Assembly (NCBI GenBank): GCA_002269645.1
Contig: NIVC01000952.1
Location: 1-64,000 of the forward strand
Source: Macrostomum lignano
Lineage: Eukaryota
Direction: 5' to 3'
Length of the DNA: 64,000 nt
Shown: piece by piece, positions 1 to 63,988 of the stretch
Layout: every line of letters begins with the position of its first letter
How positions within the stretch are numbered: the stretch's first letter is position 1
Made by a program: the position numbers and the translations under genes
Notes under the pieces: model-generated
What the model was told of the DNA's origin: nothing
The model's input: only the letters and a program-made list of their open reading frames with translations
Databases searched by the model: none

Positions 1-1542
1 CCGACGGAGAAGCGGTGGCCGTGCTGCTGATGGACACTCAGGGTACATTCGATCACCAGTCGACTCAGCAGGAATAGCACCTCAATCTTCGTCTTCAGCA
101 CACTACTGAGCTCAGTGCAGATCTTCAACATCCGCAGAACATTCAAGAGCGGATCTGCAGCACCTCCGACTGTTCGTTGAGTTCGCTCGATGGCAAAGGA
201 TGAAAGCGAAAAGGTCCTTCAAGACTTGTGGTTCTACGAGTCGTAATTCGGGACTGGCAAAACCCCGATGAGTTCGAGAACGCCATGCGGCGGTATGAGA
301 TATCTACGCAAGGTAGTGGCGTCAGATGAGAACATGCGCCGCTGAAAACCGTGAGCTCCGCACAGGCATCAGGAAATATTTCGCATGTTTTGCTGCCTGC
401 TGCCCAGCCCTGGGAAGTGTGCGACTAGATCGAATGTTCGGGGGAGCTGGAAAGCTAGATGAAGACTTCGTTGAGGAGGTTGAGAAGTTTGTGGAACTCG
501 TGCTATCACCTGAAAAGCTTGTCATTAAAGCAGTTAATGGAAGAGAACTCACTGGGCGCGAGCTGCTGAACTTCGCCAAAGTCTACTTCGAGGCCTTCCG
601 CAGCGGCAGGCTGCCTTCCCAAAGTCGCTGTTCTCGGCCACCGTCGAATTGACGAACGCTGTGCGGTTGCCGCATCGCCAGACAGACGTTTGTTGACAAG
701 GCCAGGCCGATTTCAGCCTCGCATCCGCTGTTGACGCAATCGAATTAGAGCCACAGCTGCAGAAATTGGCCGACGAATCGCTCGAACAATTCGACAAGCG
801 CTGCATGCAGAAGGACTCAACCGACTGCGACAAGTGCCGACGAAAACTGCACGACGATCTACAGAGGGAGGTGCAGGATTTGATACTAATGAACCAGCTG
901 AAGTCTGACAAGATCGCTGAGCAGAAGAAAGGAGAGTTGCTGCAGCAAGATTTTCAGCGTGTCCTTGATGAGAAAGTTGATACCAACAGAAGGATGCAGC
1001 AACTGGAGCAGGAATTCCAGGAAAAAGTGAAACGAATCTTGGAGTCATCCGTGTCCAAGGAGGAGATGCGGTCACTGCTAGAAAAAGAGTCCATGCAACG
1101 CCAATTGGCCCTGCAGGAGTCCGAGGCGCGCAGCTCGCGGCAGGCAGCCAAGATAGAATCCCTGCTAAAGATGAACGAGGAGCTGCAGCGCCAGGTGCGC
1201 GAAAGCCAAGAGGAACGCAGGCAGCAGGATGCCAACGCAAAGCAGATGATGGCGCAGTGGGAGAAGCACATGGAAGAAGAGCGCAGGCGTCGGGAGCAGG
1301 AAGCCAACGCAGTGCTAAGTGGGAGAATTTTCTTTTCGGAGTTTTGCAGGCTGCTGGGGGTGAAATTGTTAAATGAACGATTTCGATTTTTTTCAGCGGC
1401 AGCGAGACAAGAGGCGCCAGTTCTTCCTCTGCCGCAGCCGCGGCTTCAACCCCAACCTTCATCCCGTTTCCCATGGTTCAGCCCCCAGCTTCGCAGAAGC
1501 AGGAAAATCCAAAAGGAAAGGAAGCTGATGGGAAATAGCTGA
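1..1542 (+). pseudogene. Atlastin-family GTPase paralog 1 (5'-truncated by the window edge, multiple frameshifts and stops)
   Basis: Begins PDGEAVAVLLMDTQGTFDHQSTQQ (atlastin G3 motif), followed by an in-frame TAG at about 75 and several indels. Pieces such as DEDFVEEVEKFVELVLSPEKLVIKAVNGRELTG (326-652) and MQQLEQEFQEKVKRILESSVSKEEM (766-1542) align to the 2807-4593 gene. The indels could also be assembly errors. Confidence 0.8.
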
Positions 1543-2806
1543 TCAAAATTGTGTTTTACTTTACAATATGTTTGATGTAATCATAATTGACTATATTTGT
1601 TATTTATTCACGCATATTTGCCTTTTTTGAATTCCTGTAGACATTCTGGTTCAAACAAAATTTTATTTGAAAGCGGTACGAGCTACATCATTGATTTTAG
1701 GAACGAGCGTACTATCAAAACAGGGTTCCATCCAGAATTATCCTACTATTCAAGATTTTGGAATATTCTGTCAGTTTCTGACATAAATTTCCTGTTTAGC
1801 CTCGTGTTCTTCAGAAATTTTAAATACACAAATATATTTAAACCTCAGATAAATTAATTAATTTTATTATATTGAATGTCTGCCAAGCTACTCGGTATCA
1901 GGCTTCCCCGCTCCCACCAACGCTCTGTGGCCTTCACAGAGCTGTTTGCCACTGCAACTGTGCTTTCATTCTCAATGTTCTTAATATTCATTATTAGCGT
2001 TATGCTATGGCAGGCAGAAATCAGATCCCCAAATTCCTTGAAAAACCCTAAGAATTCTTGCGTAAAAGCCTGCTCAGAGCCTGCTCGTGAGGAGTGGTAG
2101 CCGCCTCCGAGGCATTTACAGCGGCCCGGAGGGCACCAAAACCACCTTAGCAGCCGGAGAGGTTCGCAAAGAGCCTTGCGCTCAGGCATAAAAAATTATA
2201 CCTTAAAAATCCTTCACAATTAGGGCACTCTTACGAGATGAAAAGAGTGGATAATACAAGTGCAGGGATTGAGATAGCCTTTTACCCATTCAGAAATCAA
2301 TAAGTTCGGTTATTCATATCGCCATGAGCTCAAAATATTAAAAGCTCGAAGCTTGTCAAGCATCTCCCCACAACTTAATACTCAATCGGATCTGATTGAG
2401 TATTAAGTTGCGCCCTAGTTGTGAATGACAAGCAATTGTCTTTCCGACGATGTGGACCTTCGAGCTTATGAAACGACCGCCTTATTTGATTCCCTTTGGG
2501 TTAGAGAATGCTGAAGCGAGTGACAAAGCCAAATCAAAGCTAAAATAGACATAAGCGTAACGCGTTTGTCTTGCAATTTTATTTTATCACGCATCAGGAA
2601 AATGATGCAATCCAATTATCAGTATACACAGGTCCTGTTTTAGATGCTCTTTAGGGTCACAAAGCTTGGGGGAAATTCGAATACTGGTACAGCTATTCGA
2701 TAAAACCATTTGTTGATCTACTTTTGTATAACAGAATTTCATGAAAAACTGTCATTACAACAGCAGAATGGGAAAAATTCTTCTGTAGTCAGGGCAGCCT
2801 CAGCTG

Positions 2807-4593
2807 TCACATCATCACACAGTTGCCTTTATTGAAGCTATCTTGTATCTCGTTCAGCTTTTGGGCACTCTGTCTACTGTTGGCCTCTTCATTTTTCAGC
2901 GCGAACATCACTGCTTCCAAGTTTCTTTGGATCTCCGAAATTTCTCTGTTAGCGTTTCTACGCTCCTCGTTTCGTTCTCTGTCGAGCTTTTCCTTCTCAT
3001 TCCGAAGACTGCTGACCTCGCGTTCAAGCCGCTGCACAGCACTGTTGGATTTCTCGCTTTGGCTGCGGCTTAATTCAGAGAGACGACCTTCCATAAACCT
3101 TTTATCGGTTTCCAGACAGCTGATCCGCATGTTGTAACTATCCGATTCCACTTTCAGTCGTCGAGTCATCTCTTCCTTGCTCACGCTGTTCGCCCGAATC
3201 TCCTCCACTCGCTTCTGGAAGTCAGCCTCCAACTGCTGCATCTTCTGCACGCCCTCAGCGTACGCGCCCGCTGGGTCTCGAGCTCCTTCGCCAGCAAGTC
3301 CGCCCTCGCGTCCGCCTCCTTCTTCCTCGCAGTCTCTTGGAGCAGCAGCGCCTGCTTGCTGCCAATCGATCGCAGCTCCTCCTGCAGCCTCCTCTTCACG
3401 CAGTCAACGTCAAAATCCGCGACTTCCATGCACCGAGAGTTGAACAACTTTAACGCCTCTTTCTCGATGCCGGCGAGGACTTTGTCCATCTCGGCAGAGC
3501 TAATGTCCAACGACGACTCCGATCGGAAGAACTCCTGGATCTTCGTCTCAAAGAGCTGCTTCGCCTCCGAGGCAGCGAGAACGTTGATCATCTCGACGGT
3601 GGCCGTAAATATGCTTCTCGGAGTTGGCAGCCTGCTGCTGCAGATGGCGTCAAAGTACTCCTTCAGAGCGAAGAAGTCCACACCCTTGAAGTCTCTGCCG
3701 TTGATCTGCTTCACTGGAATGTTCTCAGGTGATGCGATGAGGGCCACAAACTTTTCCAGCTCGTCGACAAACATTGCATCAAGTTTTTTAAGCTCGCCGC
3801 GGAACTTCGACGAGGCTACGGCGTTTCCAGGATGCGGCAGCAGACAGCATGACGCCTGCTCGAAGTGATGCGTGATGCCCTGCCTCAGTTCCTGGTTCTC
3901 TCTCGGCATCTGCTCGTCGCACTTTAAGATCTGCTTTAAATACTCCACTCCGTCAGCGACTCCGTACTCAAAATCATCAGGATTCTGCCAATCTCTGATA
4001 AGGAACCACAGGTGTTGCAGCGCCTTCTCCTTCGAGCCCTTCGCCATCCCAGCGAACTCGACAAACAGCCGCAGGTGCTGCAGATCCGTTTCCTGGACCT
4101 TCTGAGAAATGTTGAGGATCTGCACTGAGCTCATCAGTGTGCTGAGTGCAAAGATAGTTGTGCAGTCCTGCTGAGTCGACTGGTGATCGAATGTACCCTG
4201 AGTGTCCATCAGCAGCACGGCCACCTCTTCTCCGTCGGGCTTGCGGATGAAGAACGGCTCGGACCAGATAAGGATCCCGGTGGTGTCTCTCTCGCTCCCG
4301 GCTCTCCAGTGGAATCCGTCGTCGAGCTGGTCCTCAGATCGAATCCAGTCTCGAGTGTCACCTCGACTGAGAGCTCGGAGGTATCTCAGGAAGAAGTTGA
4401 GCAGGAAGGACTTGCCTGTGCGGAAGGCTCCGGCCACGCTGATGACGGCCACCTTGGCGCTGTTCAGTTTGTCCAAATCAATCATCTGCTTCAGCACTTC
4501 TGCATCGAGTTCAAACCTTGGTCCAGTTTCAGTTCGCTCTTTCACGGACACCACAAGCGGCAGCGGTCGCCCAGCATTATAGCTTGAGGCCAT
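2807..4593 (-). CDS. Atlastin-family (dynamin-like/GB1-RHD3) GTPase with coiled-coil tail and C-terminal CaaX; one frameshift near 3265
   Basis: Atlastin motifs GAFRTGKSFLLNFFLRYL (G1), RDTTGILIWSEPF (G2), LMDTQGTFD (G3), DLQHLRLF, FLIRDW, LPHPG. ATG at 4593. ORF 3181-4602 shifts into ORF 2807-3250, which ends KGNCVMM*. No introns are apparent. Confidence 0.85.
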
Positions 4594-5904
4594 GCTTAGC
4601 ACCGTTAAATCAGTATCTCGTTTGTTTTAATGCAGTGGTGAAATAAAATCTTGCTACGCTTTGAGGAAATTTTTTATATATTTTATTATTATTTGCTCAG
4701 TGTTTCTTTTATTGTCAATAGAAAGCTGTGGAGTTTCTCACCAACTCGTGTGCTAAAAATATCGTGCTCTTAACATCAAACAGATCATCTTCATACAGTT
4801 TCTGTTCGCTTTGACTTGCCATAAGCTGAGCATGTAGCTCATATGAATAAAGTGAGAAAAAACTCAAACACGAGAATTTTGTCAGCTCGATATAAATAAA
4901 ATGTGCTGAAACTCGTGAGCATTTGCTCACGCGGTCTTTCTCTGCGAGTTTGTCCTTCGAACTGAGTAAATACTCGCGATTGATCGAATGCACAATTAAT
5001 GTGCTTTTGTAAAACTGCAGGCACTTGAGCACCCGCAGTCTGGGAGAGTGCAAAGATATTTCTTGGAATTTCTCAGAAATACGCTCGTACTTCTTCCTCA
5101 GCTGTGCTCAATGAAAAGTATGCACAACCTTGTGGCTCACGTGAAACTTTCTCTTGTTTGTTGGTGGCGTGAACGAACTTTTAAAACTCGTTGCAGCGAT
5201 CAGTTTGAAAAAAAATCTGAAAAAAATCAAACGAAATTGATGTTTGACAAGATCTTTGAGCAGTTCTTTGGCAAGTTGCTCGTTAGTCCAATTGTTTAAA
5301 AATTAAATTACGTATTGCGATGTTAGATTTTGTGTAACTTCTGTTTGCCTACTTAGAACATAGAAAGTTCAGTGGCAGCTCGTGGGGTAAAACAATGGAT
5401 AAATAATCAGCGGTCCCAGTGCGTGACAACGATTGTCTGGCGAGCGCCGGCAGGCGCGAGCCATAGACAAATCGTTGTCACGTGCTGCGACCGCCGATTC
5501 TTTGCATTGTTTTTCTGTTTGACGATCCTACAGACAATGCATTGTTTGTAGTAATATATTGTTCTGCATTAAAAATGTGAATAATGATCGCCAAATTGCT
5601 AAACAATGGCTTACCTCAGGCTTGGAATTTCCAACAAATCAGCTTCCATGAGTGCTTCCCACAGATTCCAACAGAAAATACTTGTCCCAAACGTACTTGC
5701 ATATAGTATCGCGTAAATTTTCTTAGAAAATCTGTACAGCGGAGAGAGAGAGAGAGAGAGCTAGGGGTCTGAGCGCCTGAATGTGCACTAGCTGGAGAGT
5801 ACAACAGGACAATAGCAAATCCCCTGTTGGCATCAGTAGACATCATCTACAAAGACAGAACTAGCTCTTAGCTCGTACGAGTAGAAGATAACAATCAGCC
5901 CTAA

Positions 5905-6580
5905 TATTGCAGCGAGTCATCAGCAGCGCGGCCACCTCTTGTCCACTGGGCAAGATGAGGATCCCGGTGGTGTCTCTCAATCCCGGATCTCCAATGGAAG
6001 CCGTCATCGAACGCCTAGACCGCCAAAATGATGAAGACCGGTATTCATTCCATACTTGCACAGGGTTCGCTTCCATCATCGCGTCTCATCTTCATGCATT
6101 CCGTGGCAAGAGCCCCGCCGAGCTGGTGTTTGTCTCACACTATGAACGAGGCGAGGTCTTTTATCAACCTCTTAGCTCGAAACTTTCAACGTCCTCGAAG
6201 GGGAATCGCTACCGCCTTGCAAGCGCCAAGCTCGCCCCAATTTTCATTGCTGCTCGATCGAGCTGCATTCTTTTGCAGGATGAAAATGCTCCAGCCGCTG
6301 ACGTCGAGCTGGCCGAATGCACACGACCTTTCCGAGGTGGCCAGTGAACAGGAGGCAACTGCTGACAAAAAGCCTGCTGCAAAGAAAATTGCCACGAGAC
6401 AGCCACGAGAGCAATGCCGTACTGCCCACCGGCCCTTTTTCTAAACGACAAACGGAGCGTCGCTAAACACAAGGCCAAACATGCCTGCAGTCGGAGAACA
6501 TGTCTTGGCGAGTGACTACAGGTGTCACATGCCCTTTGGGTGAGAACGGGAAGAAGACGTCGAGCCTCACCGTTCAAGGG
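5905..6580 (-). pseudogene. Degenerate atlastin-family paralog 3 (N-terminal fragment)
   Basis: The minus strand at 5910-6020 reads FDDGFHWRSGIER-(D)TTGILIL..GQEVAALLM across frameshifts. This matches LDDGFHWRAGSERDTTGILIW...EEVAVLLM of the 2807-4593 gene. The upstream boundary is approximate. Confidence 0.65.
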
Positions 6581-7360
6581 AGAATGAAGCCTTCCTTCAC
6601 GTGATCCGGAGCTATAGTTGCTGTTTCGGAACCACCGCTAGCGCCAGAAGCGATTTTATGAATTTTCGCTAATAATTATAGCTGAACTGCAATGATTCCT
6701 TAGTTGTCTGCGAAGATTTTAATAAATGTAAATTTGTATTGTTTATTTGACTTGCTGTCATACCCCAACCCACATTAATAAACGCTTGTAAAACAATGAC
6801 GAGCTGCTTTTTCGGTAAGCAACAAAACTTTATTAAAAAAATTTAAGTGTATAAAAAAAGCAGAATTATGTGTCACTGCTTTTCGCCTATTTGATGCAGT
6901 ATTACAGTGAGTATACAATTGTCGATTTCAAGTTTGCTGAGATTCAATGCATAGACAGAAGGGTCACTATAGAGGTTGCCAAGTACTCTTAGAAGATCGG
7001 GCCGGTAGTGGGCCATTGCAGAGCAGCAAAACGGCACAATCTACTAGAAGCAAAGCGTTGCGAAAGGAAAGAAAAATGCACTGCATCGGGCAGAGAACTG
7101 CAGATTGAATTGCGTATCTAATGTTTGCTAATTGGGACATTGGAAATGCAAGCCGTTGAAGAGTTGTGCAGATTTATGGATCTACAACAGGACGACAAGG
7201 TGGTTTGCTGTTGATGTGATAAAACAACTGTACATTCGTGAGATCCGTAATATACTCGTATGGTTAAAATTGAAAGTGTCACTTTGTGCGCCGTAAAGTA
7301 CATTGTTTATTTTGCAAGCACTTGTTTATATACTCACGCTGCTGGTGGACATAAAACTGC

Positions 7361-7636
7361 CACTTTGGATCTTCTATGCGCCATTTTGGATTTTGTAAGT
7401 GCCATTTTGGATTTTGTAAGTGCCATTTTAGATCTTGTAAGTGCCATTTTGGATCTTGTAAGTGCCATTTTGGATCTTGTAAGTGCCATTTTAGATCTTG
7501 TAAGTGCCATTTTGGATCTTGTAAGTGCCATTTTGGATCTTGTAAGTGCCATTTTGGATCTTGTAAGTGCCATTTTGGATCTTGTAAGTGCCATTTTGGA
7601 TCTTGTAAGTTCCATTTTATATTTTGTAAGTGCCAT
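7361..7636. repeat. 21-bp minisatellite (GTGCCATTTTGGATCTTGTAA)
   Basis: About 13 tandem copies. Confidence 0.95.
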
Positions 7637-7698
7637 TGAATGCTCTTAAGGGAGCCACTTTGAAACCCATACAGCTGCAATAAAAGCAGCAGGCGGAT

Positions 7699-7914
7699 TC
7701 AAGCCTCTGCCTCAGCAGCAGCGGCAGCAGCTGCGGCGGCCGAAGCGTCCTTGAGCTGGGCGATCTCCGCGAACACGCTGGCCAGAGGCTGGTACTGAGG
7801 GGTCCAGCTCACCAGGTGGCTGGGAAACCGGCCCGATGGCGCCGCCGCCTGGGAGAAGGCGGACGCGGCCGCGGCGGTTGATCGGGGCAGCTCCAGGCTG
7901 GGCACCGGCGTGGC
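7699..7914 (-). CDS. ds: Dachsous exon 9 (conserved C-terminal motif)
   Basis: LVSWTPQYQPLASVFAEIAQLKD then TGA at 7701-7699; acceptor cccgcag|GCC. Confidence 0.8.
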   Translation of the reverse strand, partial: ATPVPSLELPRSTAAAASAFSQAAAPSGRFPSHLVSWTPQYQPLASVFAEIAQLKDASAAAAAAAAAEAEA

Positions 7915-10900
7915 CTGCGGGCGAGGGGAATCGGTGGTGGCGATTCGAGTGCTTGGTTGCGGGTTGCGGGCAGCTCAACTAACTGGGTAAGTGACTGGAG
8001 TGGGGTGGGTGACGAGTGGGGTGGGTGACTGGAGTGGGGTGGGTGACTGGGGGTGAGGTGGGTGACTGGGGGTAAGGTGGATGACTGGAGTGGAGTGGGT
8101 GACTGGAGTGCAGTGGGGTGGGTGACTGGCGGTGGGGTGGGTGACTGGAGTGCAGTGGGGTGGGTGACTGGCGGTGGGGTGGGTGACTGGAGTGCAGTGG
8201 GGTGGGTGACTAGCGGTGGGTGGGTGACTGGAGTGCAGTGGGCGGGTGACTGGGGGTAAGGTGGATGACTGGGGTGAGGTGGGTGACTGGGGTGAGGTGG
8301 GTGACTGGGGTGAGGTGGATGACTGGGGTGAGGTGGATGACTGGGGTGAGGTGGATGACTGGGGTGAGGTGGATGACTGGGGTGAGGTGGATTCAGCCAA
8401 TGCTGAGCAGCAAACCTGGTAGTGATCCTCGCCGGACCATCGCCGGCACCTTAGCGGGGAGGCAGCATCCGGCGGCGGCTCGCGCACGCCCAGGCGCAGC
8501 AGGTACTCCCGGTGGTCGCGCGGCAGTGAGGCTTCGGCACCGTCGCCGAAGCCGACGCCAACGCCGCTGCCGCAGTCGCTGCTGCCGCGGCCGGAGCTGC
8601 TCAGCCTGGACAGGTCCGTCTGCGTGCGCGGCGGTGGCGGCGGCGGCAGCGGCTGCTGCTGCAACAGCAGCGAAGCCGGCGGCACCTGCGGCGACAGTCG
8701 ATCGAAGCAGCTGTCGTAGATGGCGGGCGACGGCGGCGGCGAGCCGGCACCGGGCGAAGGCGGCTTCCTCCCCTGCCGGCGGCGCGAGTGTCGGCGGCGG
8801 TGCCAGCAGCGCCGCCTGCAGCCGAGGACAGCCAGCAGGACCGCGACGGCGATCAAAGCCACGACGCCGAGGACGCCCCCGCCGATGCCAGCAGCGAGGG
8901 CGGCTCCGCCAGCGTCCGCGGCCGCGTTGGCTTCGGCCAGCGGCACCGGCGCTTCCAGGACGAGCGTCGCCACGGCGGCGAGCTGCCCGCTGCTGGCCCG
9001 CAGCCGGTAGGTGAAATTCCGTCGTTCCGCAGGCGTCGAACCGGGGCCCACCAGGCGAGCAGAATCGAACCCGCGACGTATGTACACCTGGCCTGTGGTG
9101 GCGTTGACGCCCAGCCTGAGGCGGCGGCTGCGGTGACGGCGGTCGGTGCCAGCGGGGAAGCCGTTGAGAAGCGCCGAGAAGCCGACGCGACCGGCGGCGC
9201 CTCCGTCGGCGTCGACAGCCGATAGCGTCAGCGGCAGCAGCTGGCCGGTGCGCGGATGCGGATTCGAACTCGGGACTGACAGGTGAAATTCGCGGCGCGG
9301 CAGCACAGGCCGGAACTCGTCGACGTCTTCGATGAGAACTTCGATCGGGAGCGGAGACGCCAAGCTGGTGCAGTTGGCGCTGAGCGAGTGGCGCTGCTTG
9401 CTCTCGTAGTCAAGGATGCGAAGCGTTGTCAAGAGGCCTGTAGACAGGCTCAGGTGAAACAGGCTGGAGCTTGGCGAGAGGCTGCAGTTCGGCGCCACCT
9501 GAGGAGCCAAACGTTCATGGAAGATAGTGAAAGACATGCCACGAGATTTGAATGACTGATATGTGACAAGCGGATGTGATTGACTGACATGTGACAAGCG
9601 GATGTGAATGACTGACATGTGACAGGCGGATGTGAATGACTGACATGTGACAAGCGGATGTGATTGACTGACATGTGACAAGCGGATGTGAATGACTGAC
9701 ATGTGACAGGCGGATGTGAATGACTGACATGTGACAAGCGGATGTGAATGACTGACATGTGACAGGCGGATGTGAATGACTGACATGTGACAGACAATAT
9801 GAATAATCTGCAACCAACCTCTCCCACAAGCGCCCCAGGTCCCAGGCCCTCTCTGACGCGCAGCACAAGCGGCACAGTCACAGGTTGCCGCGGGACCGTC
9901 GGAGTCGGGAACTGCAGCGTCACCAGGGTGCAGGCGCTCAACGGGCCGGCGGACGAGGCGGCGGGGCTGTCCGATGCCACGATGAGCAGCTCGAGAGAGC
10001 CGGAGGCTGGCGGCTCAGCCAGCAGGATGAGGTTACCGTCGGGGTCAACTCTGGCCAACAGCGACGACTCCGGCGAAGCGGCCACGCTGTACGAGACGCG
10101 TCCGTTGCCATTGGTAACGCTGTCGGCGTCCCTAGCAACCAGGCGAATGCCGGGAATCGGGCGGCCAATCCAAGCGGATGCCGGGCCGGACAGAGAGACG
10201 CTGCCAGGATGGGGATCGAACTCCGGCGCGTTGTCGTTCACGTCAGTCACTTCGAGCTGCGGAGTTCGGGAAGAGGAGGCCATGCAGAAGCGGGTGCGAA
10301 ATTCTGCTTTACCGCTGTGTGGGTTGTAGTGACGAAATTCTACACAGTTTATTTACAGCTCGCCATACATACTACTGCAGAGATGGCCATGTGAACGATA
10401 AAAAATTATTATAACTTCTCCCGAATTTAAAAAAATTGAAAAAACGTTCAGCGAGGAGGAAAACTTGAGGCGTGACAACAGAAAGAATCACAAGCCTGCA
10501 ATAAAGGCAAGAGAGAGGACAGGGAGAGGAGGGAGAGGATGGAGAGGAGGGAGAGGATGGAGAAGAGGGAGAGGATGGAGAGGAAGGAGAGGAAGGAGAG
10601 GAAGGAGAGGAGGAAGAGGAGGGAGAGGATGGAGAGGAGGGAGAGGATGGAGAGGAAGGAGAGGATGGAGAGGAGGGAGAGGATGGAGAGGAAGGAGAGG
10701 ATGGAGAGGAGGGAGAGGAGGGAGAGGATGGAGAGGAAGGAGAGGATGGAGAGGAGGGAGAGGATGGAGAGGAAGGAGAGGAGGGAGAGGGAGAGGATGG
10801 AGAGGAAGGAGAGGAGGGAGAGGAGGGAGAGGATGGAGAGGAAGGAGAGGATGGAGAGGAGGGAGAGGAGGGAGAGGATGGAGAGGATGGAGAGGAAGGA

Positions 10901-16900: not shown

Positions 16901-19900
16901 AGAGAGAAGAAAGGGGAGATTAGAGATGACAAAATAGTTTGAGAGATGAGATAAAATATAAGAGAGAGAAGTGAGGAGAGATGAGAGGAGATAAGAGAGA
17001 TGAGATGAGATGAGATGAGAGAGGAGATTATAGGAGAGGAGAGGAGATGAAAGGAAAGAGGAGATGACATGCGATTAGAGGAGAGAGGAGATGAGATGCG
17101 ATTAGAGGAGAGAGGAGATGAGAGGAGAAAGAAGAGAGGAGATGAGAGGAGAGAGGAGATGAGAGGAGAGAGGAGATGAGAGGAGAGAGAAGAGGAGATG
17201 AGAGGAGAGAGGAGAAGAGAGGAGATGAGAGGAGAGAGGAGATGATATGAGATAAGAGAAGAGAGGAGATGAGAGGAGAGAGGAGATGAGATGCGATTGG
17301 AGGAGAGAGGAGATGAGATGAGAGGAGAGAGGAGATGAGAGGAGGAGATGAGAGGAGAGAGAAGAGAGGAGATGAGAGGAGAGAGGAGATAAGATGAGAT
17401 GAGATGAGAGGAGAGAACTTAGAAGAGACACCAACCTTGAGCGGGCCGGAGTTTGCCGAACCCTGGCCTTGCGGGCTGACCCTCAGCCCGCAGACCCTCA
17501 GACCCTTGCGGGCTGGCCAATTTTCGTAAACACAAGCCCTAAATGAATGTTTAACCCTGGTTAAACTTAATTTAAATAGAATGAAATTATTTTTTTATTT
17601 CTATTTTCTATTCTTAATCTAACATCAAGTCCTACAGCCAAAGGGAGCCACAGAATGACCCTTGCCAATGTTCCACCAGCATGGAGTCATTCAGTCAGTC
17701 AAGCCCTACCCCAACCCACCGCCTTAAGTTCCTGTTTGAAGTGGTTTCAAGTTCCTCCATTTTTGTCCACCCAGCATCCGCTCAGGTTTCTCAGCTCCTC
17801 TCTTTCCAAGCTGAAACTGCCTGACTCACTCTGGCCACAATCTCTACCAGCCACCTGAGAAATAGTGAGCAGTAGTTCTCAACTTTCGGGTTGCAGCCAT
17901 ATGCCTAGCATAGTTGAGTAGGCAGTTAGATCTCTGAGTTCACTCACTACATTGCGTGACTACGAAACTTCGCAGGCATTTTCTCAGATCAGCCCCAAGA
18001 TTGCAACTGTTGTTTTGAGTATTTTGAGTCCGTCTCTCAGCTGGATACATGACAAATTAATGAACAGGCCCACACACACAGCAGTGCGAGCCCGGCTCAT
18101 CCGACTCCCCACCACCGCACTTTGGATAAACACAAACACAAACAGAGAAATACAGACAGGCACAAACCTCATACAAGACTATCCACTATCCAGTTCTACT
18201 CAGTGAAGAAGCAGACCCTAAAATATTAATTAGCTAGATAAAAATTCTTAACCGGCGATTAATTACTTCCAATCCAGATTTCTAGCCTAAGGCGTCCTTG
18301 GCTCAGACTAGGAGCTATTTTTTAATAGTCTTTGTCTGAGCAACAGACAGAGACGGGGGGAGGGGAAACTTGAGAAGCCCGGGAGAGCTTATGAGGCGTG
18401 GGAAACCACTGGGCTGCGGAATCGGGGCGGGATAATGCGGCCCTTTTTCAATAAGCTGCAGGAGCGGAGAACAGAGCGCTGGGAAACTTGGGCAGGATAT
18501 GGGCGGGGGCTGCAGTGTGCTCAGGCAGAAAGAAGCGACTCACTCGGGGCCTTTATAGTAAATAAATTGCACTCTGAAATATAGACGGGCGAAACTTGGA
18601 AAGCAAATTGAAAATTTGCCAAATACAATTGAAATGAAATATAAGTACGAGTTTTAAACTGCTGTGTCAGCACCCTGTAACACTACTGTGTCAGCACCCT
18701 GTAATATTACTGTGTCAGCACCCTGTAACACTACTGTGTCAGCACCCTGTAATATTACTGTGTCAGCACCCTGTAACACTACTGTGTCAGCACCCTGTAA
18801 TATTACTGTGTCAGCACCCTGTAACACTACTGTGTCAGCACCCTGTAATATTACTGTCAGCACCCTGTAACACTACTGTGTCAGCACCCTGTAATATTAC
18901 TGTCAGCACCCTGTAACACTACTGTGTCAGCACCCTGTAACACTACTGTGTCAGCACCCTGTAATATTACTGTCAGCACCCTGTAACACTACTGTGTCAG
19001 CCTCTGTAACACTATCGTGTCAGCCTCTGTAACACTACTGTATCAGCACCCTGTAATATTACTGTCAGCACCCTGTAATATTACTGTCAGCACCCTGTAA
19101 TATTACTGTCAGCACCCTGTAATATTACTGTCAGCACCCTGTAATATTACTGTCAGCACCCTGTAACACTACTGTGTCAGCCTCTGTAACACTACTGTGT
19201 CAGCACCCTGTAACACTACTGTATCAGCACCCTGTAATATTACTGTCAGCACCCTGTAATATTACTGTCAGCACCCTGTAATATTACTGTCAGCACCCTG
19301 TAACACTACTGTGTCAGCCTCTGTAACACTACTGTGTCAGCACCCTGTAACACTACTGTATCAGCACCCTGTAATATTACTGTCAGCACCCTGTAATATT
19401 ACTTTCAGCACCCTGTAATATTACTGTCAGCACCCTGTAACACTACTGTGTCAGCCTCTGTAACACTACTGTGTCAGCACCCTGTAATATTACTGTCAGC
19501 ACCCTGTAATATTACTGTCAGCACCCTGTAATATTACTGTCAGCACCCTGTAATATTACTGTCAGCACCCTGTAATATTACTGTCAGCACCCTGTAATAT
19601 TACTGTCAGCACCCTGTAATATTACTGTCAGCACCCTGTAATATTACTGTCAGCACCCTGTAATATTACTGTCAGCACCCTGTAATATTACTGTCAGCAC
19701 CCTGTAATATTACTGTCAGCACCCTGTAACACTACTGTGTCAGCCTCTGTAACACTACTGTGTCAGCACCCTGTAACACTACTGTATCAGCAACCTGTAA
19801 TATTACTGTCAGCACCCTGTAATATTACTGTCAGCACCCTGTAATATTACTGTCAGCACCCTGTAATATTACTGTCAGCACCCTGTAATATTACTGTCAG

Positions 19901-22900
19901 CACCCTGTAATATTACTGTCAGCACCCTGTAATATTACTGTCAGCACCCTGTAACACTACTGTGTCAGCCTCTGTAACACTACTGTGTCAGCCTCTGTAA
20001 CACTACTGTATCAGCACCCTGTAATATTACTGTCAGCACCCTGTAATATTACTGTCAGCACCCTGTAATATTACTGTCAGCACCCTGTAATATTACTGTC
20101 AGCACCCTGTAATATTACTGTCAGCACCCTGTAACACTACTGTGTCAGCCTCTGTAACACTACTGTGTCAGCACCCTGTAACACTACTGTATCAGCACCC
20201 TGTAATATTACTGTCAGCACCCTGTAATATTACTGTCAGCACCCTGTAATATCACTGTCAGCACCCTGTAACACTACTGTGTCAGCCTCTGTAACACTAC
20301 TGTGTCAGCACCCTGTAACACTACTGTGTCAGCCTCTGTACCACTACTGTGTCAGCACCCTGTAACACTACTGTGTCAGCACCCTGTAACACTACTGTGT
20401 CAGCCTCTGTAACACTACTGTGTCAGCACCCTGTAACACTACTGTGTCAGCACCCTGTAACACTACTGTGTCAGCCTCTGTAACACTACTGTGTCAGCAC
20501 CCTGTAACACTACTGTGTCAGCCTCTGTACCACTACTGTGTCAGCACCCTGTAACACTACTGTGTCAGCACCCTGTAACACTACTGTGTCAGCCTCTGTA
20601 ACACTACTGTGTCAGCCTCTGTACCACTACTGTGTCAGCACCCTGTAACACTACTGTGTCAGCACCCTGTAACACTACTGTGTCAGCACCCTGTAACACT
20701 ACTGTGTCAGCACCCTGTAACACTACTGTGTCAGCACCCTGTAACACTACTGTGTCAGCACCCTGTAACACTACTGTGTCAGCACCCTGTAACACTACTG
20801 TGTCAGCACCCTGTAACACTACTGTGTCAGCACCCTGTAACATTACTGTCAGCACCCTGTAACACTACTGTGTCAGCACCCTGTAACACTACTGTGTCAG
20901 CAAGAAGCCTCACCAGACTCCGAGTTGATGCAGAACAGGCCGTCCTCGTTGCCACCAACGATGTCGTAGAGAACATCCTCAGCGTCGCCACCTTCAACCC
21001 GAGCTGTCACCATCAGGCACTGAGCAGTGCCGGCCGCAGTCAGGCAGGTGCCCGCCGCGGAGTTCTCGGCGATGCTGCCGGTAAAGTTTCGGTCGAACAG
21101 CAGCGCCGGCTTGGATGTCGCCGGCAGCAGCAGAATGGCGGTCTCGGCCGTCAGGGCAGCCGGAAGGCCGGAGTCGGACGCGCGCACTCGAATCAGTCGG
21201 GAGTTCGGCAAGGCCGACTGTCCGAGACTGACCAGGCCGCTATCCGGATCCACAGTGACGGCGTGGCTGGCGCTGTCCGGCTCGGCCAGGCTGTAGGTCA
21301 GGCGGCTGTTCGCGGCGCTCGAGTCCCGGTCGGTGGCGCGCAGGGTCAGCAGGGGGCCGGGGCCGGCCGGCCGCGCCGAGTAGAAGGCCGACGCGAACTC
21401 GGGCCGGTGGTCGTTCTGGTCCACAATCTCGACGTCAACGCTCACCAGGGCGGACATCGGGTTTACCTGCGCGCAGTGTGCGGGGACAAAGACTCCGGAT
21501 GAATACTGGACAATGCGATCATTGGAAGGGGGCGATTCTATGGGCAATTCTATAGGCGGATAGGGGAGATTCTATGGGCGGATAGGGGGCGGTTCTATGG
21601 ACAGAAAGGGGCGATTCTATGGGCGGATAGGGGGCGGTTCTATGGACAGAAAGGGGCGATTCTATGGGCGGATAGGGGGTGGTTCTATGGGCGGAAAGGG
21701 GCGATTCTATGGGAGGATAGGGGGCGGTTCTATAAGCGGAAAGGGAGCGATTCTATGGGCGGATAGGGGGTGGTTCTATGGGCGGAAAGGGACGATTCTT
21801 TGGGCGGATAGGAAGAGATTCTATGGGAGGATAGGGGCGATTTTATGGGCGGATAGGGGCGATTCTATGGGCAGATAGGGAGAGATTCTATGGGCAGATA
21901 GGGAGAGATTCTATGGGCGGATAGGGGGCGGTTCTATGGGCGGATAGGGGGCGGTTCTATGGGCGGATAGGGGGCGGTTCTATGGGCGGATAGGGTGGGG
22001 GGATTCTATGGTCGGAAGGAGGAGATTCTATGGGGGTAGGGGGAGATTCTATGGGCGGATAGGAGGAGATTCTATGGGGGGTAGGGGGAGATTCTATGGG
22101 CGGATAGGGTGGGGGGATTCTATGGTCGGAAGGAGGAGATTCTATGGGGGGTAGGGGGAGATTCTATGAGCGAATAGGGGCGTTTCTATGAGCGGATAGG
22201 GGCGATTTTATGGGTGGATAGGGGGTCACTATGAAAACTAGTGTGCACCTCGCTGAAGTCGGTGGCGGCCACAGTGATGGACACGAAGGCCAGTTTCTCC
22301 CGATCGACCGGAGTGGCCAGCCGCAGCTCCCCAGTGGCCGGGTGGACGCTGAACAGACCGGCCGCCGCACCTCCGGACTGCGACACGACGCGATAGGCGA
22401 GCCGGTCGCCGTCCTCGCGGTCCCAGGCGGACACGGCGAGCAGCAGGTGGCCGGGCGGGGCGAGCTCGGGCAGGCGGGCCGAGTAGCGGCTCTCCCGGAA
22501 CACCGGGGCGAACCGGTTGGCCGGCAGGACCCGGACCAGCACCAGAGCGGTCCCGGTGCGGCCGCCGCCGTCCGTGGCTACGACGCGAATCCGATGATGA
22601 TAGCGCGGGCTGGCCGGGCCGCGCGGCGGCCTCGGGTAGTCGAGCGCCGAGCAGGACAGGCGGCCGCTGCTCGGGTCGAGGATGAAGCGGCTCAGAGCGT
22701 CATCGCCGTCGATGGAGTAGACAAGCCGGCCGGCGGGGCCGCGGTCGGGGTCGTGCGCGGTCACGGTGATCAAGTCGGCGAAGGCCTGGCCCTCGGGCAC
22801 CTCGGTGAAGTACTCGAGCTCGGCGAACTCCGGCGAGTGCAGATTCTCGTCCTGCAGGCTCACGGTGATGAGGCAGGTGTCCGCCAGCTGGCCGTCGGGC

Positions 22901-25900
22901 TCGCGGAGCAGCCCGGTCACAGAGTAGGAATCCCTGCTGTCCGGATGCAGTGTCCGGGACAACCGAACCTGGCCGGTGGCCGAGTCAACCAGGAACAGGT
23001 CGTCGAACAGGCCGGAGGGCAGGCCGAACCGGTCCGCGGCCGACTGCTGCAGGCGGGACACTCGGGCGGAGCGGCTCCTGGCGGCCAGTTGGGCGACTTC
23101 CTGGCCGGGCGGCGCGGCAGTGGACAGGCTGGCCAGGTAGGCGGGCTGGGAGAAGCCGGCCGAGCCGGACTCGGAGCCATCGGGCAGCAGTGGCAGGCCG
23201 ACAAGGCGCCAGTCCGAGCGAGGCACGGCGCCGGCGTCCTCGACGCTGACGTTGAGTCGCAGCTGCAGCCGATGCTGCGCCGTTGAAGACGCGGCCGCGG
23301 CCGCTGCAGCCGCTGCCGCAGCAGCCGCCTCGGAGCCGGGCACGGCAAGCCGCACCAGGCCGAGCGAGTCGATGCTGACTGCCCGACCGGCCGAAGCGTC
23401 CGCCTTCCAGCGGAACCGAGCAGCCAGTCCGGCCGGGCCCGGGTCCGGGTCGGCCAACTCCAGGTGGCCCACGATGCGGCCGGCCGGGTCGCTGGGCAGG
23501 AAGAAGGCGCCCTCGCCCAGCCGGAACTGCGGCGCCCAGTTGTTAACATCGCGGACGAGTTGGACGCGAAGCACCGCGTGACGCCGCCTGCGACAATCGG
23601 GCGGGCCGGCGCACAGGTCGGTGGCCATCGCGGCCACCTCGAAGCTGTTGTTAGCGGTTGCCATGCCAACCAGGCTGCGCTTGGTGTACAGCTGACCGGA
23701 CACCGGGTGCAGCCAGAGAAAGTCGGCAAGTCGGTCGAATGCCAGGCGGAACCGGACGGTGCCGTTGGGTCCAACGTCGGGATCGGCGGCAGAGAAGCGG
23801 TACAGCGGGGAGCCAGCGGGCAGTGACTCCGGCACGGTCACCGCAGGCGCGGCATCGGCGAACACCGGCCAGTTGTCGTTCTCGTCCAGAACGCGGACCT
23901 CGAGTGCCACCCAGCAGGAGCGGGGCCGGCCGGGGCCTCGCTGAGCCGCCTCAGTCACCAGCACCTGGTAGGCGTGGACTGGGGCCGACTCCCCGTCCAG
24001 CCGGCGGTTCACCAGCACCCGGCCGCTGTCGATGGCCACCGCCACCGCCGAGTCAGCCGGCCGCACCACAGTGAAGTAGGCCGCCGCCTGCGACTCCGTG
24101 AAGATCCGGCCGATCACGTGACCAACGCTGGCGGACTCGCTCACAGCCAAACTGACGCTGCTGTTGCGCCAGCCGTCCGAACGGTCATCGCCACCGACAT
24201 TGTCATTATCGGCATCGACATTGTCGAACGGCACAGTTTGCAGGCTGATGGACGACGAGCCGGTCAGGCCGCCCCCATCGGTGGCCGTCAGCTGGCCGGA
24301 CACGCCGCCACTGTCCAGGTCCGCCAGTTGGCCAGCTACAGAGACAACGCCGGTCACCGGATGGACGGTCAGGAAAGCGGCCGCGGGACCGGACACGGCA
24401 AATCGGGTGTCGCCATTGCTGCCGCCTCCAGATTCGGGTGCGTCAGCGTCTGTGGCGGACACAGTCGCCAGAGCGGCACCAAGCGGCGAGTGGCCGGCCG
24501 CAAGCAGACGGTAGGCCGGCTGTCCGAATGTCGGCGCGGCGTCGTTGACATCGGAGACGAGCACGCAGAGAGGGGCGATGGCGCTGAGAGACTTGGGTGT
24601 GCCAGCGTCGGCCGCCTCGACACTTAGGAGATGCTCCGGTTGGGCCTCCCTGTCCAGCGGCCGCAGAACTCGGACAGCGCCGTCCACCGGGTCGATGCCA
24701 AAGTAGTCGCTGGGCGTTGTAAATCGGAATCGGATGCGCCCGTTGTCGCCGAGGTCCGGGTCGGAGGCTGCCACGCGGCCGACCACCGAGCCGACGGGGG
24801 CGGCCTCGCTGACCAGGAACCAGTAGCCCGCCGGCTGGGACAGCGCGGGCCGGTGATCGTTGGTGTCCCGCACCAGCAGGCGGCGGGTGAAGTTCGAGCA
24901 CAGCAGGTCGGAGTCGCACACCCTGACGGACAGGTCGATGCCGCTGCCGGCGAGGTCGCTGATGCTTCGGCGGACGGTCAGCAGGCCGGTGGACGGCGCC
25001 AGCGACAGCCGCTCGGCGGCGGGGCCCGCCAGCTCGTAGGTGAGGCCGACCGGGCCGCCGTCCGGGTCCTCGCAGGCGAGGCTGTCAATTCGGTCGCCCG
25101 GCCGGAGGTTGTCCGGCACCGACTGGCCGGAAGCGGCGGCGGCGGATGCGGGCCGGCCGCAGTCGGGCGGGTTGTCGTTCTCGTTCAACAGGCCGATGCT
25201 CACCAGCAGGACGGAGGAGCTAGCAATGCCGTCGCAGCTGACTCGAAGGTCGCGAGTTCGCGGCCCGGTCTCGAAGTCCAGGCCGGGCGGCTGCAGCAGC
25301 AGGCTGCCGTTGGGCAGCAGCTGGAAGGGCGGCCGCGGCTCCAGAAGCCGGTAGCCAGAGGGGCAGCCGCCGACCGCCGCCACGGTGAAAATCTCCCGGC
25401 CTGGCGGTTGCCACTCGCTGACGTCCACTTGGAGTCTGGGGGCACGAGTTGGGACTGGAGATTTAGCCTTGGTCGAATCCCACTACTCAAATCCCGCACT
25501 GACTCAAATCCCAAACCGACTCAAATCCCAAACCGACTCAAATCCCACACTGACTAAAATCCCACACTGACTAAAATCCCACACTAACTCGAATCCCACA
25601 GATTCGAATCCCACATTAACTCGAATCCCACACTGACTCGAATCCCACAGATTCGAATCCCACATTAAATCGAATCCCACACTGACTCGAATCCCACAGA
25701 TTCGAATCCCACATTAACTCGAATCCCACACCGACTCGAATCCCACATTAACTCGAATCCCACACTGACTCGAATCCCACAGATTCGAATCCCACATTAA
25801 CTCGAATCCCACACCGACTCGAATCCCACATTAACTCGAATCCCACACTGACTCGAATCCCACAGATTCGAATCCCACATTAACTCGAATCCCACACTGA

Positions 25901-59696: not shown

Positions 59697-63988
<4,292 letters not shown>

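What the first reader, a model, noticed from the sequence alone, without database searches (positions are those of the whole stretch)
2807..4593. Atlastin-type GTPase that has swapped its TM hairpin for a coiled coil and a CaaX prenylation box (GBP-like architecture)
Seen: the GTPase motifs are atlastin-type (GAFRTGKS, RDTTGILIW, LMDTQGTFD, DLQHL.LF, FLIRDW). After the middle domain there is no hydrophobic segment, only a long charged coiled coil ending NCVMM*. Established: atlastins are anchored in the ER by two TM helices, whereas their sister family, the immune GBPs (e.g. GBP1), use a long helical tail plus CaaX, and X=M usually directs farnesylation. Inference: this is a lineage-specific, lipid-anchored atlastin derivative convergent on GBP design, possibly a membrane-attacking or immune effector rather than an ER fusogen.
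Basis: partly seen in the sequence, partly recalled or inferred. Interest (0 to 1): 0.8.

Follow-up and report, generated by a model that had tools for sequence, protein, structure and literature searches.

The report
Flatworm atlastin-like GTPase with lipid-anchor tail
This flatworm (Macrostomum lignano) gene encodes a relative of the ER-fusing GTPase atlastin that has lost its two membrane-spanning helices. It carries instead a long helical tail ending in a lipid-attachment (CaaX) signal, an undescribed layout resembling that of the immune GBP proteins of vertebrates; its function has not been tested.

Summary
On the minus strand, 4593→2807, lies an intronless gene for a 595-aa protein. It has an atlastin-type GTPase domain and three-helix bundle (PDB atlastin-1 E 1.7e-85, against GBP5 4e-7), no hydrophobic segment, a roughly 200-aa heptad-patterned helical tail, and the ending NCVMM-stop.

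The window copy has a 1-bp deletion near 3264. A 99.4% identical copy in the M. lignano assembly GCA_002269645.1 has one intact 595-codon ORF.

The gene belongs to a clustered, intronless family found only in M. lignano:
- A, 595 aa, ends CVMM.
- C, 556 aa, ends CVLM or CPLM.
- E, 553 aa, ends CSIQ.
- F, 601 aa, ends CKQQ.
- D, 573 aa, ends in a short hydrophobic segment instead.
- B is a pseudogene (window 1-1542).

Cys at position -4 is kept although the tails are only 23-27% identical. The species also keeps a canonical, intron-containing atlastin with two TM helices (P0127).

Best reading: a farnesylated, peripherally anchored atlastin derivative that dimerises on GTP to tether or coat membranes, and is not an ER fusogen. 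An immune role is plausible, since the TM-less silkworm BmAtlastin-n is antiviral, but it is untested. Verdict: new variant of a known kind, moderately interesting.

The parts
2807..4593 (-). Gene A of the family. Intronless CDS for a 595-aa atlastin-like GTPase (after correcting a 1-bp deletion), stop codon included.
   Evidence: ORFs, sequence, frame-corrected protein. The intact 595-codon orthologous ORF in L001 is 98.2% identical at the protein level.
3634..4476 (-). Atlastin-type large GTPase domain (aa ~40-320), with G1 GAFRTGKS 4408-4431, G2 RDTTG 4276-4290, G3 DTQG 4195-4206 and G4 RD 3991-3996.
   Evidence: Pfam GBP domain E 3.4e-64. PDB atlastin-1 E 1.7e-85. Motif residues fall in invariant columns of a 58-sequence alignment. 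Coordinates checked.
3415..3633 (-). G-to-middle-domain linker (LPTPRS, 3613-3630) and three-helix-bundle middle domain (aa 321-393).
   Evidence: Aligned to ATL1 through residue 404. The AF2 model superposes on ATL1 GDP forms with TM 0.86-0.88. P323 and P325 are invariant.
2831..3414 (-). Charged helical tail (aa 394-588) predicted as two long helices, 394-469 and 473-588, broken at the family-conserved SVS of EEIRANSVSKEEM (3167-3193).
   Evidence: AF2 secondary structure, pLDDT about 80-90. The paralogue C variant P0005 breaks at the same motif. Heptad contrast z=5.3. No homologue beyond generic coiled coils in 1.8 billion representatives.
3262..3266 (-). Site of the 1-bp deletion (frameshift) relative to the intact copy.
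   Evidence: DNA alignment of window against L001; indel list.
2810..2821 (-). CaaX box CVMM (aa 592-595), directly followed by stop TGA 2807-2809.
   Evidence: Cys at -4 is also found in paralogues C (CVLM or CPLM), E (CSIQ) and F (CKQQ).
4674..4680 (-). TATA-like element TATATAA, 87 nt upstream of the ATG (candidate core promoter).
   Evidence: Pattern match only; function not tested.
2578..2583 (-). First AATAAA after the stop codon (224 nt downstream); candidate poly(A) signal.
   Evidence: Pattern match only.
1..1542 (+). Paralogue B, convergent with gene A. A degenerate pseudogene with several frameshifts and stops, cut off by the window start.
   Evidence: Three-frame translation and tblastn. 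The same pseudogene, with fewer breaks, is at L001 14906-13017. Database model P0007.
5918..6011 (-). Short relic of a further paralogue's G domain (RDTTGIL...VAALLM).
   Evidence: ORF 5861-6079; tblastn.

Best explanation
The locus is one copy of an intronless Macrostomum lignano gene. Its 595-aa protein is an atlastin-derived dynamin-like GTPase: a complete atlastin G domain and three-helix bundle, then, in place of the two TM helices and the amphipathic C-terminal helix, two long heptad-patterned helices and a CaaX box (CVMM).

Proposed mechanism:
- The Cys is farnesylated (X = M), the -VMM is trimmed and the Cys is methylated at the ER surface. This gives a peripheral, reversibly membrane-bound protein (inferred).
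- GTP binding drives head-to-head G-domain dimerisation and the atlastin-type swing of the helical bundle (inferred from conserved motifs and linker).
- The lipidated ends of the long tails are thereby brought together or exposed, which tethers or coats membranes as GBPs do (inferred).
- It is unlikely to fuse ER membranes. By established knowledge, atlastin fusion needs both the TM segments and the amphipathic tail, and the species keeps a canonical atlastin for that job.

The gene is one of a clustered family whose G-domain core is homogenised by gene conversion while the tails and C-terminal anchors diversify. This fits paralogues aimed at different membranes.

Shown: architecture, ancestry, family, conservation of the CaaX Cys, an intact allele, and transcription of paralogues. 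Inferred: prenylation, dimerisation, tethering or coating. Speculative: immune function.
For: Atlastin identity:
-.
- Foldseek ATL1 E 7e-34, 37% identity, TM 0.86-0.88; RNF112 1e-21; GBPs 1e-18, 18% identity.
- All G1-G4 residues, the P-loop Arg and the linker prolines fall in invariant columns.

No TM segment.

Tail:
- Two long helices with a conserved hinge in two independent paralogue models.
- Heptad signal.

CaaX conserved in 4 of 5 intact paralogues despite 23-27% tail identity and saturated dS.

An intact 595-codon copy exists in GCA_002269645.1, with 11 synonymous substitutions and 10 non-synonymous codons between the two copies.

Canonical atlastin P0127, with two TM helices and an amphipathic tail, is present and contains introns.

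Paralogues are annotated as single-exon genes in an annotation built purely from RNA-seq.

A KRas CaaX tag drives membrane localisation in M. lignano embryos, so the prenylation machinery works there (bioRxiv 10.1101/2024.11.12.623055).

A TM-less atlastin paralogue with antiviral activity exists in silkworm (PMC4926086).
Against: - There is no direct evidence of lipidation, localisation, GTPase activity or dimerisation.
- The window copy is frameshifted.
- Transcription of gene A itself is supported only by a chimeric model, P0003, that contains its first ~140 codons.
- Paralogue D lacks a CaaX box, and the boxes of F (CKQQ) and of the paralogue C variant P0005 (CPLM) are non-ideal.
- Gene A has no polybasic or palmitoylation second signal, so its target membrane is unknown.
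- The 3D arrangement of the tail (hairpin or extended) could not be inspected, because only secondary structure and pLDDT were returned.
- M. lignano is heavily duplicated genome-wide, so multicopy status alone is weak evidence for immune function.
Confidence: 0.6

Rival explanations
1. This particular copy is a dead duplicate. The 1-bp deletion is real, and the window locus yields only a truncated 470-aa protein without tail or CaaX, or nothing at all.
For: - Frameshift at about 3264.
- The neighbouring paralogue B is clearly a pseudogene in both copies.
- M. lignano carries large duplicated blocks in which one copy can decay.
Against: - It is the only disabling lesion in 1.8 kb.
- The tail downstream of the break has no substitutions and stays open to CVMM.
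- The window sequence is unusually rich in indels relative to L001: 30 indels against 30 mismatches in 1-2368, including non-coding parts. This looks like consensus error.
- The intact copy exists.
Confidence: 0.35
2. A soluble cytoplasmic atlastin-like factor, like silkworm BmAtlastin-n. The tail is an oligomerisation or partner-binding coiled coil, and the CaaX box is not used for membrane anchoring.
For: - BmAtlastin-n lacks TM segments, is cytoplasmic and restricts BmNPV.
- Paralogue D has no CaaX.
- F has a weak box, CKQQ.
Against: - Cys at exactly -4 followed by a stop is kept in 4 of 5 paralogues, while the surrounding tail has diverged to 23-27% identity.
- D replaces it with another hydrophobic C-terminus, which argues that a terminal membrane anchor is what is being selected.
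Confidence: 0.15
3. A regulator of the ER network. The TM-less paralogues heterodimerise with the canonical atlastin (P0127) through the conserved G domain and modulate ER fusion, much as soluble atlastin fragments inhibit fusion in vitro (established knowledge).
For: - The G-domain core is highly conserved (81% among paralogues).
- All catalytic and interface-region invariant residues are kept.
- Default targeting of CaaX proteins without a second signal is the ER/Golgi surface (established knowledge).
Against: - The family G domain is only about 43% identical to P0127, no closer than to any other animal atlastin.
- Five or more divergent paralogues with different tails are hard to explain by a single regulatory role.
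Confidence: 0.15
4. Annotation illusion: the real mRNA splices to a downstream exon encoding TM helices, so this is an ordinary atlastin.
For: None was found. It is only the general caution that the ORF end was read from genomic DNA.
Against: - Downstream minus-strand ORFs (1543-2806) encode no TM pair, and paralogue B converges from the other side.
- RNA-seq-based models of paralogues C, D and E are single-exon.
- The CaaX Cys is conserved.
- The true canonical atlastin is elsewhere in the genome.
Confidence: 0.03

Closest known systems
Canonical atlastins (human ATL1-3, Drosophila Atl, and M. lignano's own atlastin P0127)
   Same: - The G domain has identical G1-G4 motifs and the P-loop arginine.
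- The proline-containing linker and the three-helix bundle are the same.
- About 37-48% identity.
- The AF2 model superposes on ATL1 GDP structures with TM 0.86-0.88.
   Different: - No TM hairpin and no C-terminal amphipathic helix. A ~200-aa helical tail plus CaaX takes their place.
- Intronless, whereas P0127 has at least 2 introns.
- Multigene family.
- P-loop Lys to Thr (GAFRTGKS) in paralogue A only.
Prenylated guanylate-binding proteins (GBP1 CTIS, GBP2 CNIL, GBP5 CVLL)
   Same: - Overall design: a large GBP/atlastin-superfamily G domain, a helical middle region, a long C-terminal helix and a CaaX box.
- Clustered multigene family with pseudogenes.
- Full-length GBPs align over 550-640 columns in Foldseek.
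   Different: - Only about 18% identity, E 4e-7 by sequence.
- The G domain and bundle are atlastin-type, and the tail is not homologous to GBP alpha12/13.
- The resemblance is therefore convergent.
- Inducibility and antimicrobial action are unknown.
TM-less insect atlastin paralogues (Bombyx BmAtlastin-n, Atlastin3/4; Operophtera and Manduca ~750-aa proteins; tephritid 'atlastin-like' proteins)
   Same: - Atlastin-type G domain without the TM pair, with an extended C-terminal region.
- BmAtlastin-n is antiviral.
   Different: - The insect proteins listed here end without a CaaX box.
- BmAtlastin-n is reported as cytoplasmic.
- The lepidopteran group does not cluster with the flatworm family. 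The clustering with tephritid and Diamesa sequences (84%) may be long-branch attraction.
RNF112/ZNF179 (PDB 9jju-9jjx)
   Same: An atlastin-related G domain used in a non-canonical architecture. It is the second-best structural and sequence match.
   Different: - By established knowledge RNF112 has an N-terminal RING finger and C-terminal TM segments.
- Only 20-24% identity here.
Sey1p/RHD3
   Same: The same superfamily of membrane-remodelling GTPases.
   Different: No detectable sequence match at E<1e-3 in the PDB search. These proteins are TM-anchored fusogens.

Membership tests
Atlastin (ER-fusion GTPases) | GBP/atlastin-type large G domain with G1 GxxRxGKS, G2 T, G3 DTQG and G4 RD, scoring nearest to atlastins | tested here: met
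   ATL1 E 1.7e-85 against RNF112 6e-38 and GBP 4e-7.
Atlastin (ER-fusion GTPases) | Flexible proline-containing linker plus three-helix-bundle middle domain | tested here: met
   The alignment to ATL1 runs through the bundle. LPTPRS is conserved. AF2/Foldseek TM 0.86-0.88 to ATL1 residues 1-447.
Atlastin (ER-fusion GTPases) | Two closely spaced transmembrane helices after the bundle | tested here: not met
   No hydrophobic 19-mer above KD 1.4 anywhere in the protein. Nearly all of 120 atlastin hits have the pair at about aa 420-500.
Atlastin (ER-fusion GTPases) | C-terminal amphipathic helix following the TM segments | tested here: not met
   The C-terminus is a charged coiled coil ending KGNCVMM. 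Canonical P0127 has both the TM pair and that tail.
Atlastin (ER-fusion GTPases) | ER localisation and GTP-dependent homotypic fusion | not testable with these tools
   Needs cell biology and liposome assays.
Guanylate-binding proteins | G domain groups with GBPs | tested here: not met
   Best GBP E 4e-7, 32 bits, against 291 bits for ATL1. 18% identity in Foldseek.
Guanylate-binding proteins | Helical middle domain plus long alpha12/13 effector helices folded back on the molecule | tested here: inconclusive
   Two long tail helices with a conserved hinge are predicted, but the coordinates could not be inspected. The tail is not homologous to GBP_C by sequence.
Guanylate-binding proteins | Infection- or interferon-induced expression and pathogen-membrane coating | not testable with these tools
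   No expression data were found in four M. lignano papers or supplements.
CaaX-prenylated proteins | Cys at position -4 from the true C-terminus, with a1/a2 largely aliphatic and X specifying the transferase | tested here: met
   CVMM followed by TGA. Paralogues have CVLM, CPLM, CSIQ and CKQQ. By established rules X = M or Q points to farnesyltransferase.
CaaX-prenylated proteins | Motif conserved among homologues while the flanking sequence diverges | tested here: met
   4 of 5 intact paralogues, with tails 23-27% identical and dS saturated.
CaaX-prenylated proteins | Demonstrated isoprenoid attachment | not testable with these tools
   There is only indirect support: a KRas CaaX tag is functional in M. 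lignano embryos.
TM-less insect atlastin paralogues (BmAtlastin-n group) | Common origin (monophyly) with the insect TM-less proteins | tested here: inconclusive
   In the NJ tree the family is 100% monophyletic on a long stem. It groups with tephritid and Diamesa sequences (84%) but not with the lepidopteran Operophtera/Manduca clade. The backbone is poorly supported and no outgroup was used.

The most novel reading that the evidence does not exclude
Macrostomum has evolved, from the ER-fusion GTPase atlastin, its own family of farnesylated, coiled-coil-tailed GTPases that act like vertebrate GBPs. They would be cell-autonomous defence proteins that assemble on GTP and coat or tether pathogen-containing or other foreign membranes. 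Different paralogues would be addressed to different membranes by their divergent tails and anchors: plain CaaX, polybasic plus CaaX, or a hydrophobic tail. This would be an independent, convergent invention of the GBP design. It would also be a direct answer to the open question, raised in PMC9005921, of whether atlastins take over GBP-type defence in invertebrates.
Probability: 0.2. Interest if true: 0.8.

Novelty: new variant of a known kind. Interest (0 to 1): 0.55.

Why it matters
- **A natural experiment on atlastin.** The complete mechanochemical core (G domain, linker, three-helix bundle) is kept, while the TM hairpin and amphipathic helix, both thought essential for fusion, are replaced by a lipid anchor on a long helical stalk. 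Comparing it with the canonical atlastin of the same animal could show what the atlastin engine can do with only a peripheral anchor: tethering, coating or regulation.
- **Convergence on the GBP layout.** If the family is defensive, GBP-like immunity would have evolved at least twice inside one GTPase superfamily. Together with BmAtlastin-n, this would support the idea that atlastin paralogues supply GBP-type functions in invertebrates.
- **It can be tested.** M. lignano is transgenic-tractable, and CaaX tags already work in its embryos.

Tried and rejected
- **Exact-sequence look-up of the window's 470-aa truncated product:** not on record.
- **Exhaustive phmmer with the tail alone** (151 aa against 1.84 billion representatives): two hits, both generic coiled coils. 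One was a 3056-aa protein (not inspected); the other a repetitive 565-aa protein with one hydrophobic segment. The origin of the tail is therefore not traceable.
- **Pfam on the tail:** only a sub-threshold DUF5089 match, E 0.008 and below the cut-off, which I ignored.
- **Literature:** no paper combines atlastin with Macrostomum. Nothing describes a CaaX-bearing atlastin.
- **Supplement mining:** three M. lignano expression papers were searched for ATL1/2/3, atlastin (and GBP in two of them), with no hits. I found no expression pattern.
- **P0003 as the orthologue:** rejected. It is a chimeric gene model joining the first ~140 codons of gene A to paralogue C across 5.8 kb. P0001 and P0002 likewise fuse paralogues F and E.
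- **dN/dS among paralogues:** uninformative outside the G core, because dS is saturated.
- **Rooted phylogeny with GBP, RNF112 and Sey1 outgroups:** not done. The GBP alternative is excluded by scores alone.
- **tRNA and Rfam scans of the window:** empty.
Full report
**What is in the sequence**

The feature lies on the minus strand. An ATG at 4593 opens a reading frame of 470 codons, part of ORF 3181-4602. A second frame, ORF 2807-3250, continues with a charged sequence ending NCVMM and then TGA at 2807-2809.

The two frames overlap near 3260. Joining them gives a 595-aa protein.

**Identity of the N-terminal 400 residues**

- Pfam finds only the GBP/atlastin G domain (PF02263, E 3.4e-64).
- Against all PDB sequences the ranking is clear:
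  - atlastin-1 and atlastin-3, E 1.7e-85 to 1e-75, with the alignment running through the three-helix bundle to ATL1 residue 404;
  - Xenopus RNF112, 6e-38;
  - GBP5, GBP2 and GBP1, 4e-7 to 1e-4;
  - Sey1, no hit.
- An AlphaFold2 model (pLDDT 85.7, pTM 0.72) superposes on GDP-bound human ATL1 with TM 0.86-0.88 at 37% identity. RNF112 (E 1e-21) and the GBPs (E 1e-18, 18% identity) follow at a distance.
- In a 58-sequence alignment the P-loop (G55, R58, G60, K61, S62), T104, D130-G133, R200-D201 and the linker prolines P323 and P325 are invariant columns.
- The nucleotide-binding and hinge machinery of atlastin is therefore intact.
- The one oddity is Thr instead of the near-invariant Lys in GAFR-T-GKS. 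It is peculiar to this paralogue.

**What replaces the membrane anchor**

- No 19-residue window exceeds a Kyte-Doolittle mean of 1.4, and the maximum is a buried strand of the G domain.
- Nearly all of the 120 best database hits show the canonical TM pair at about residues 420-500.
- AlphaFold2 predicts two long helices after the bundle, 394-469 and 473-588, and a disordered KGNCVMM.
- The tail is 39% charged, contains no proline, and has a heptad hydrophobic pattern 5.3 SD above shuffles.
- An independent model of the paralogue C variant P0005 gives the same picture: helices 387-461 and 466-547. The break falls at the same family-conserved SVS of the motif EEIRxxSVSK(E/D)EM.
- That conserved break suggests a hinge or hairpin turn. 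I could not inspect coordinates, so whether helix 2 folds back, as GBP alpha12 does, is open.
- The tail has no detectable homologue. An exhaustive phmmer search of 1.84 billion representatives found two generic coiled coils.

**The frameshift**

- The best relatives are Macrostomum lignano proteins.
- Fetching the contig of one of them gave a stretch that is 99.4% identical to window 2413-8000 (L001, GCA_002269645.1, NIVC01003765.1).
- There the gene is a single uninterrupted 595-codon ORF, L001:10001-11788, ending CVMM.
- The window lacks one G of GGGCGGCG at about 3264.
- Between the two copies there are 11 synonymous substitutions and 10 non-synonymous codons. Most lie in the first 450 nt, and none lies in the last 520 nt.
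- The window is conspicuously indel-rich relative to L001: 30 indels against 30 mismatches in 1-2368, also in non-coding parts.
- The deletion may therefore be a consensus error, or this may be a decaying duplicate in a genome known to carry 180 Mb of 95%-or-more identical duplicated blocks. I cannot decide which.

**A gene family**

The fetched loci (L001-L004) and the window hold at least six paralogues, all intronless and clustered:

| Paralogue | Length | C-terminus | Note |
|---|---|---|---|
| A | 595 aa | CVMM | the gene in this window |
| B | n/a | n/a | pseudogene; window 1-1542, convergent with A; also broken in L001 |
| C | 556 aa | CVLM or CPLM | Cys preceded by RKPKRS |
| D | 573 aa | ...YVSPILSAAVPTALRLWFQS | no Cys |
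| E | 553 aa | CSIQ | identical on three contigs |
| F | 601 aa | CKQQ | |

A G-domain relic also sits at window 5918-6011.

Database entries P0003 and P0001/P0002 are chimeric models joining neighbouring paralogues.

The GenBank annotation of this assembly derives solely from a genome-guided RNA-seq assembly with experimentally defined ends (PMC5730564). Paralogues C, D and E are therefore transcribed as single-exon genes with these C-termini. The average M. lignano gene has 4.9 introns.

Paralogues are mosaic:

| Region | Identity among paralogues | dS |
|---|---|---|
| G-domain core | 81% | 0.3-1.2 |
| Bundle | 39% | saturated |
| Tail | 23-27% | saturated |

This pattern indicates old duplicates whose G core is homogenised by gene conversion.

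A Cys at exactly -4 survives in four of five intact paralogues against this background. This is the strongest argument that the CaaX box is functional. The hydrophobic ending of D suggests that a C-terminal membrane anchor of some kind is the selected feature.

**Relation to the canonical atlastin**

- A profile search with the family recovered M. lignano's ordinary atlastin, P0127. It has two TM helices and an amphipathic tail, and its gene has at least two introns.
- The search recovered no family member from any other species. Between the family (673 bits or more) and canonical atlastins (429 bits or less) lie only multi-domain tick and fly proteins.
- In NJ trees the family is monophyletic (100%) on a long stem. 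It is not sister to P0127 and is roughly equidistant (about 0.9) from all animal atlastins.
- It falls with other long-branch, TM-less fly proteins at 84%. This may be long-branch attraction, and there was no outgroup.
- "Atlastin-derived" is secure. "Recent lineage-specific offshoot" is not.

**Mechanism**

Shown:
- an intact atlastin engine;
- a helical, heptad-patterned tail with a conserved hinge;
- a conserved terminal CaaX;
- a separate canonical atlastin in the same genome.

From established knowledge:
- CaaX boxes with X = M or Q are farnesyltransferase substrates. After prenylation the protein is processed on the ER surface.
- Without a second signal such proteins stay on endomembranes. 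A polybasic stretch, as in paralogue C (RKPKRSCVLM), favours the plasma membrane.
- Atlastin G domains dimerise head-to-head on GTP, and the bundle swings.
- Fusion additionally needs the TM segments and the amphipathic tail.

Inference: this is a farnesylated, peripheral GTPase that tethers or coats membranes on GTP-driven dimerisation, and not a fusogen. The paralogues would be addressed to different membranes.

A KRas CaaX tag works in M. lignano embryos. The prenylation machinery and an assay system therefore exist.

An immune function is suggested only indirectly:
- the GBP-like layout;
- clustered birth-and-death evolution with pseudogenes;
- the precedent of the TM-less, antiviral BmAtlastin-n (PMC4926086);
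- the question posed in PMC9005921.

I rate the immune reading at about 0.2.

**Comparison and novelty**

- By membership the protein meets the G-domain and bundle criteria of atlastins, but fails the TM-pair and amphipathic-helix criteria. It is atlastin-like, not an atlastin sensu stricto.
- It is not a GBP by sequence. It resembles GBP1, GBP2 and GBP5 in design only.
- TM-less atlastin paralogues are known in silkworm and are visible here in Lepidoptera and tephritid flies.
- I found no description of an atlastin-type GTPase with a CaaX box, and none of this flatworm family. The proteins sit in databases as uncharacterised "GB1/RHD3-type G domain-containing protein".
- I therefore call it a new variant of a known kind, of moderate interest.

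**Rest of the window**

The rest of the window holds exons of a FAT-like cadherin and a SIK-type kinase fragment on the minus strand. They are embedded in dozens of ~20-bp minisatellite arrays. There are no tRNAs and no Rfam matches.

Noticed in passing
window 1-1542 (+); L001 14906-13017 (-): Paralogue B is a pseudogene in both copies and lies tail-to-tail with gene A. The window version has more frameshifts and stops than the L001 version. Database protein P0007 is a gene model that skips the breaks.
   Followed up: partly
window 1-2368 vs L001: This stretch differs from the GCA_002269645.1 copy by 30 indels and 30 mismatches. Most indels are 1-bp deletions in the window, and some are in non-coding DNA. 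Window 2413-8000 has only 6 indels and 27 mismatches. This suggests locally poor consensus quality, which bears on whether the frameshift in gene A is real.
   Followed up: partly
window 3991-4431 and paralogues in L001-L004: Concerted evolution. The G-domain core (aa 50-210) is 81% identical among paralogues with dS 0.3-1.2, while the rest of the genes has saturated dS. Differences between the two copies of gene A are clustered in the first 450 nt and match residues of other paralogues. This looks like gene-conversion tracts.
   Followed up: partly
L003 14502-16223 (-): Paralogue D (573 aa) has no CaaX. It ends in a short, moderately hydrophobic segment (YVSPILSAAVPTALRLWFQS; KD 1.3 over 15-17 aa), possibly an alternative membrane anchor or amphipathic helix.
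   Followed up: no
L001 10001-17448; L002 5302-10642: Public gene models are chimeric. P0003 joins the first ~140 codons of gene A to paralogue C. P0001 and P0002 fuse paralogues F and E. The junction of P0003 lies in the nearly identical G-core sequence (that of P0001/P0002 does not).
   Followed up: yes
window 4408-4431: Paralogue A alone has Thr instead of the almost invariant Lys in the P-loop (GAFRTGKS against GAFRKGKS). One copy also has SVTG instead of SVAG just upstream. The effect on catalysis is unknown.
   Followed up: no
P0004 (Diamesa tonsa), P0060/P0067/P0073/P0124/P0132 (tephritid flies), P0070/P0149 (Lepidoptera): Other atlastin-like proteins lack the TM pair. A Diamesa model with three G domains ends CTIA (a possible CaaX, though the model looks like merged tandem genes). 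Tephritid proteins of 620-800 aa have no TM or a single C-terminal hydrophobic segment. The ~750-aa Operophtera protein has no TM segment and may correspond to BmAtlastin-n; Manduca P0149 clusters with it in the tree.
   Followed up: no
window 22186-25428, 26366-27253, 31472-32710 (-): Large ORFs with multiple cadherin domains and a FAT4-like N-terminal cadherin domain. These are probably exons of a giant FAT-like cadherin, which likely corresponds to the 2968-aa gene called next to gene A in L001.
   Followed up: partly
window 61834-62892 (-): An ORF with a SIK3/MELK-type kinase UBA domain (E 1.5e-7). Probably an exon of an AMPK-related kinase gene.
   Followed up: no
window 7358-63274: More than 30 minisatellite arrays, mostly with periods of about 16-28 bp, up to 2.2 kb long (for example 18658-20902, 58043-59685). 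GC content swings from 30% to 70%. This is typical of the repeat-rich M. lignano genome.
   Followed up: no
window 27828-29807 (+), 41474-43411 (+): Two long ORFs (659 and 645 aa) with no Pfam match.
   Followed up: no
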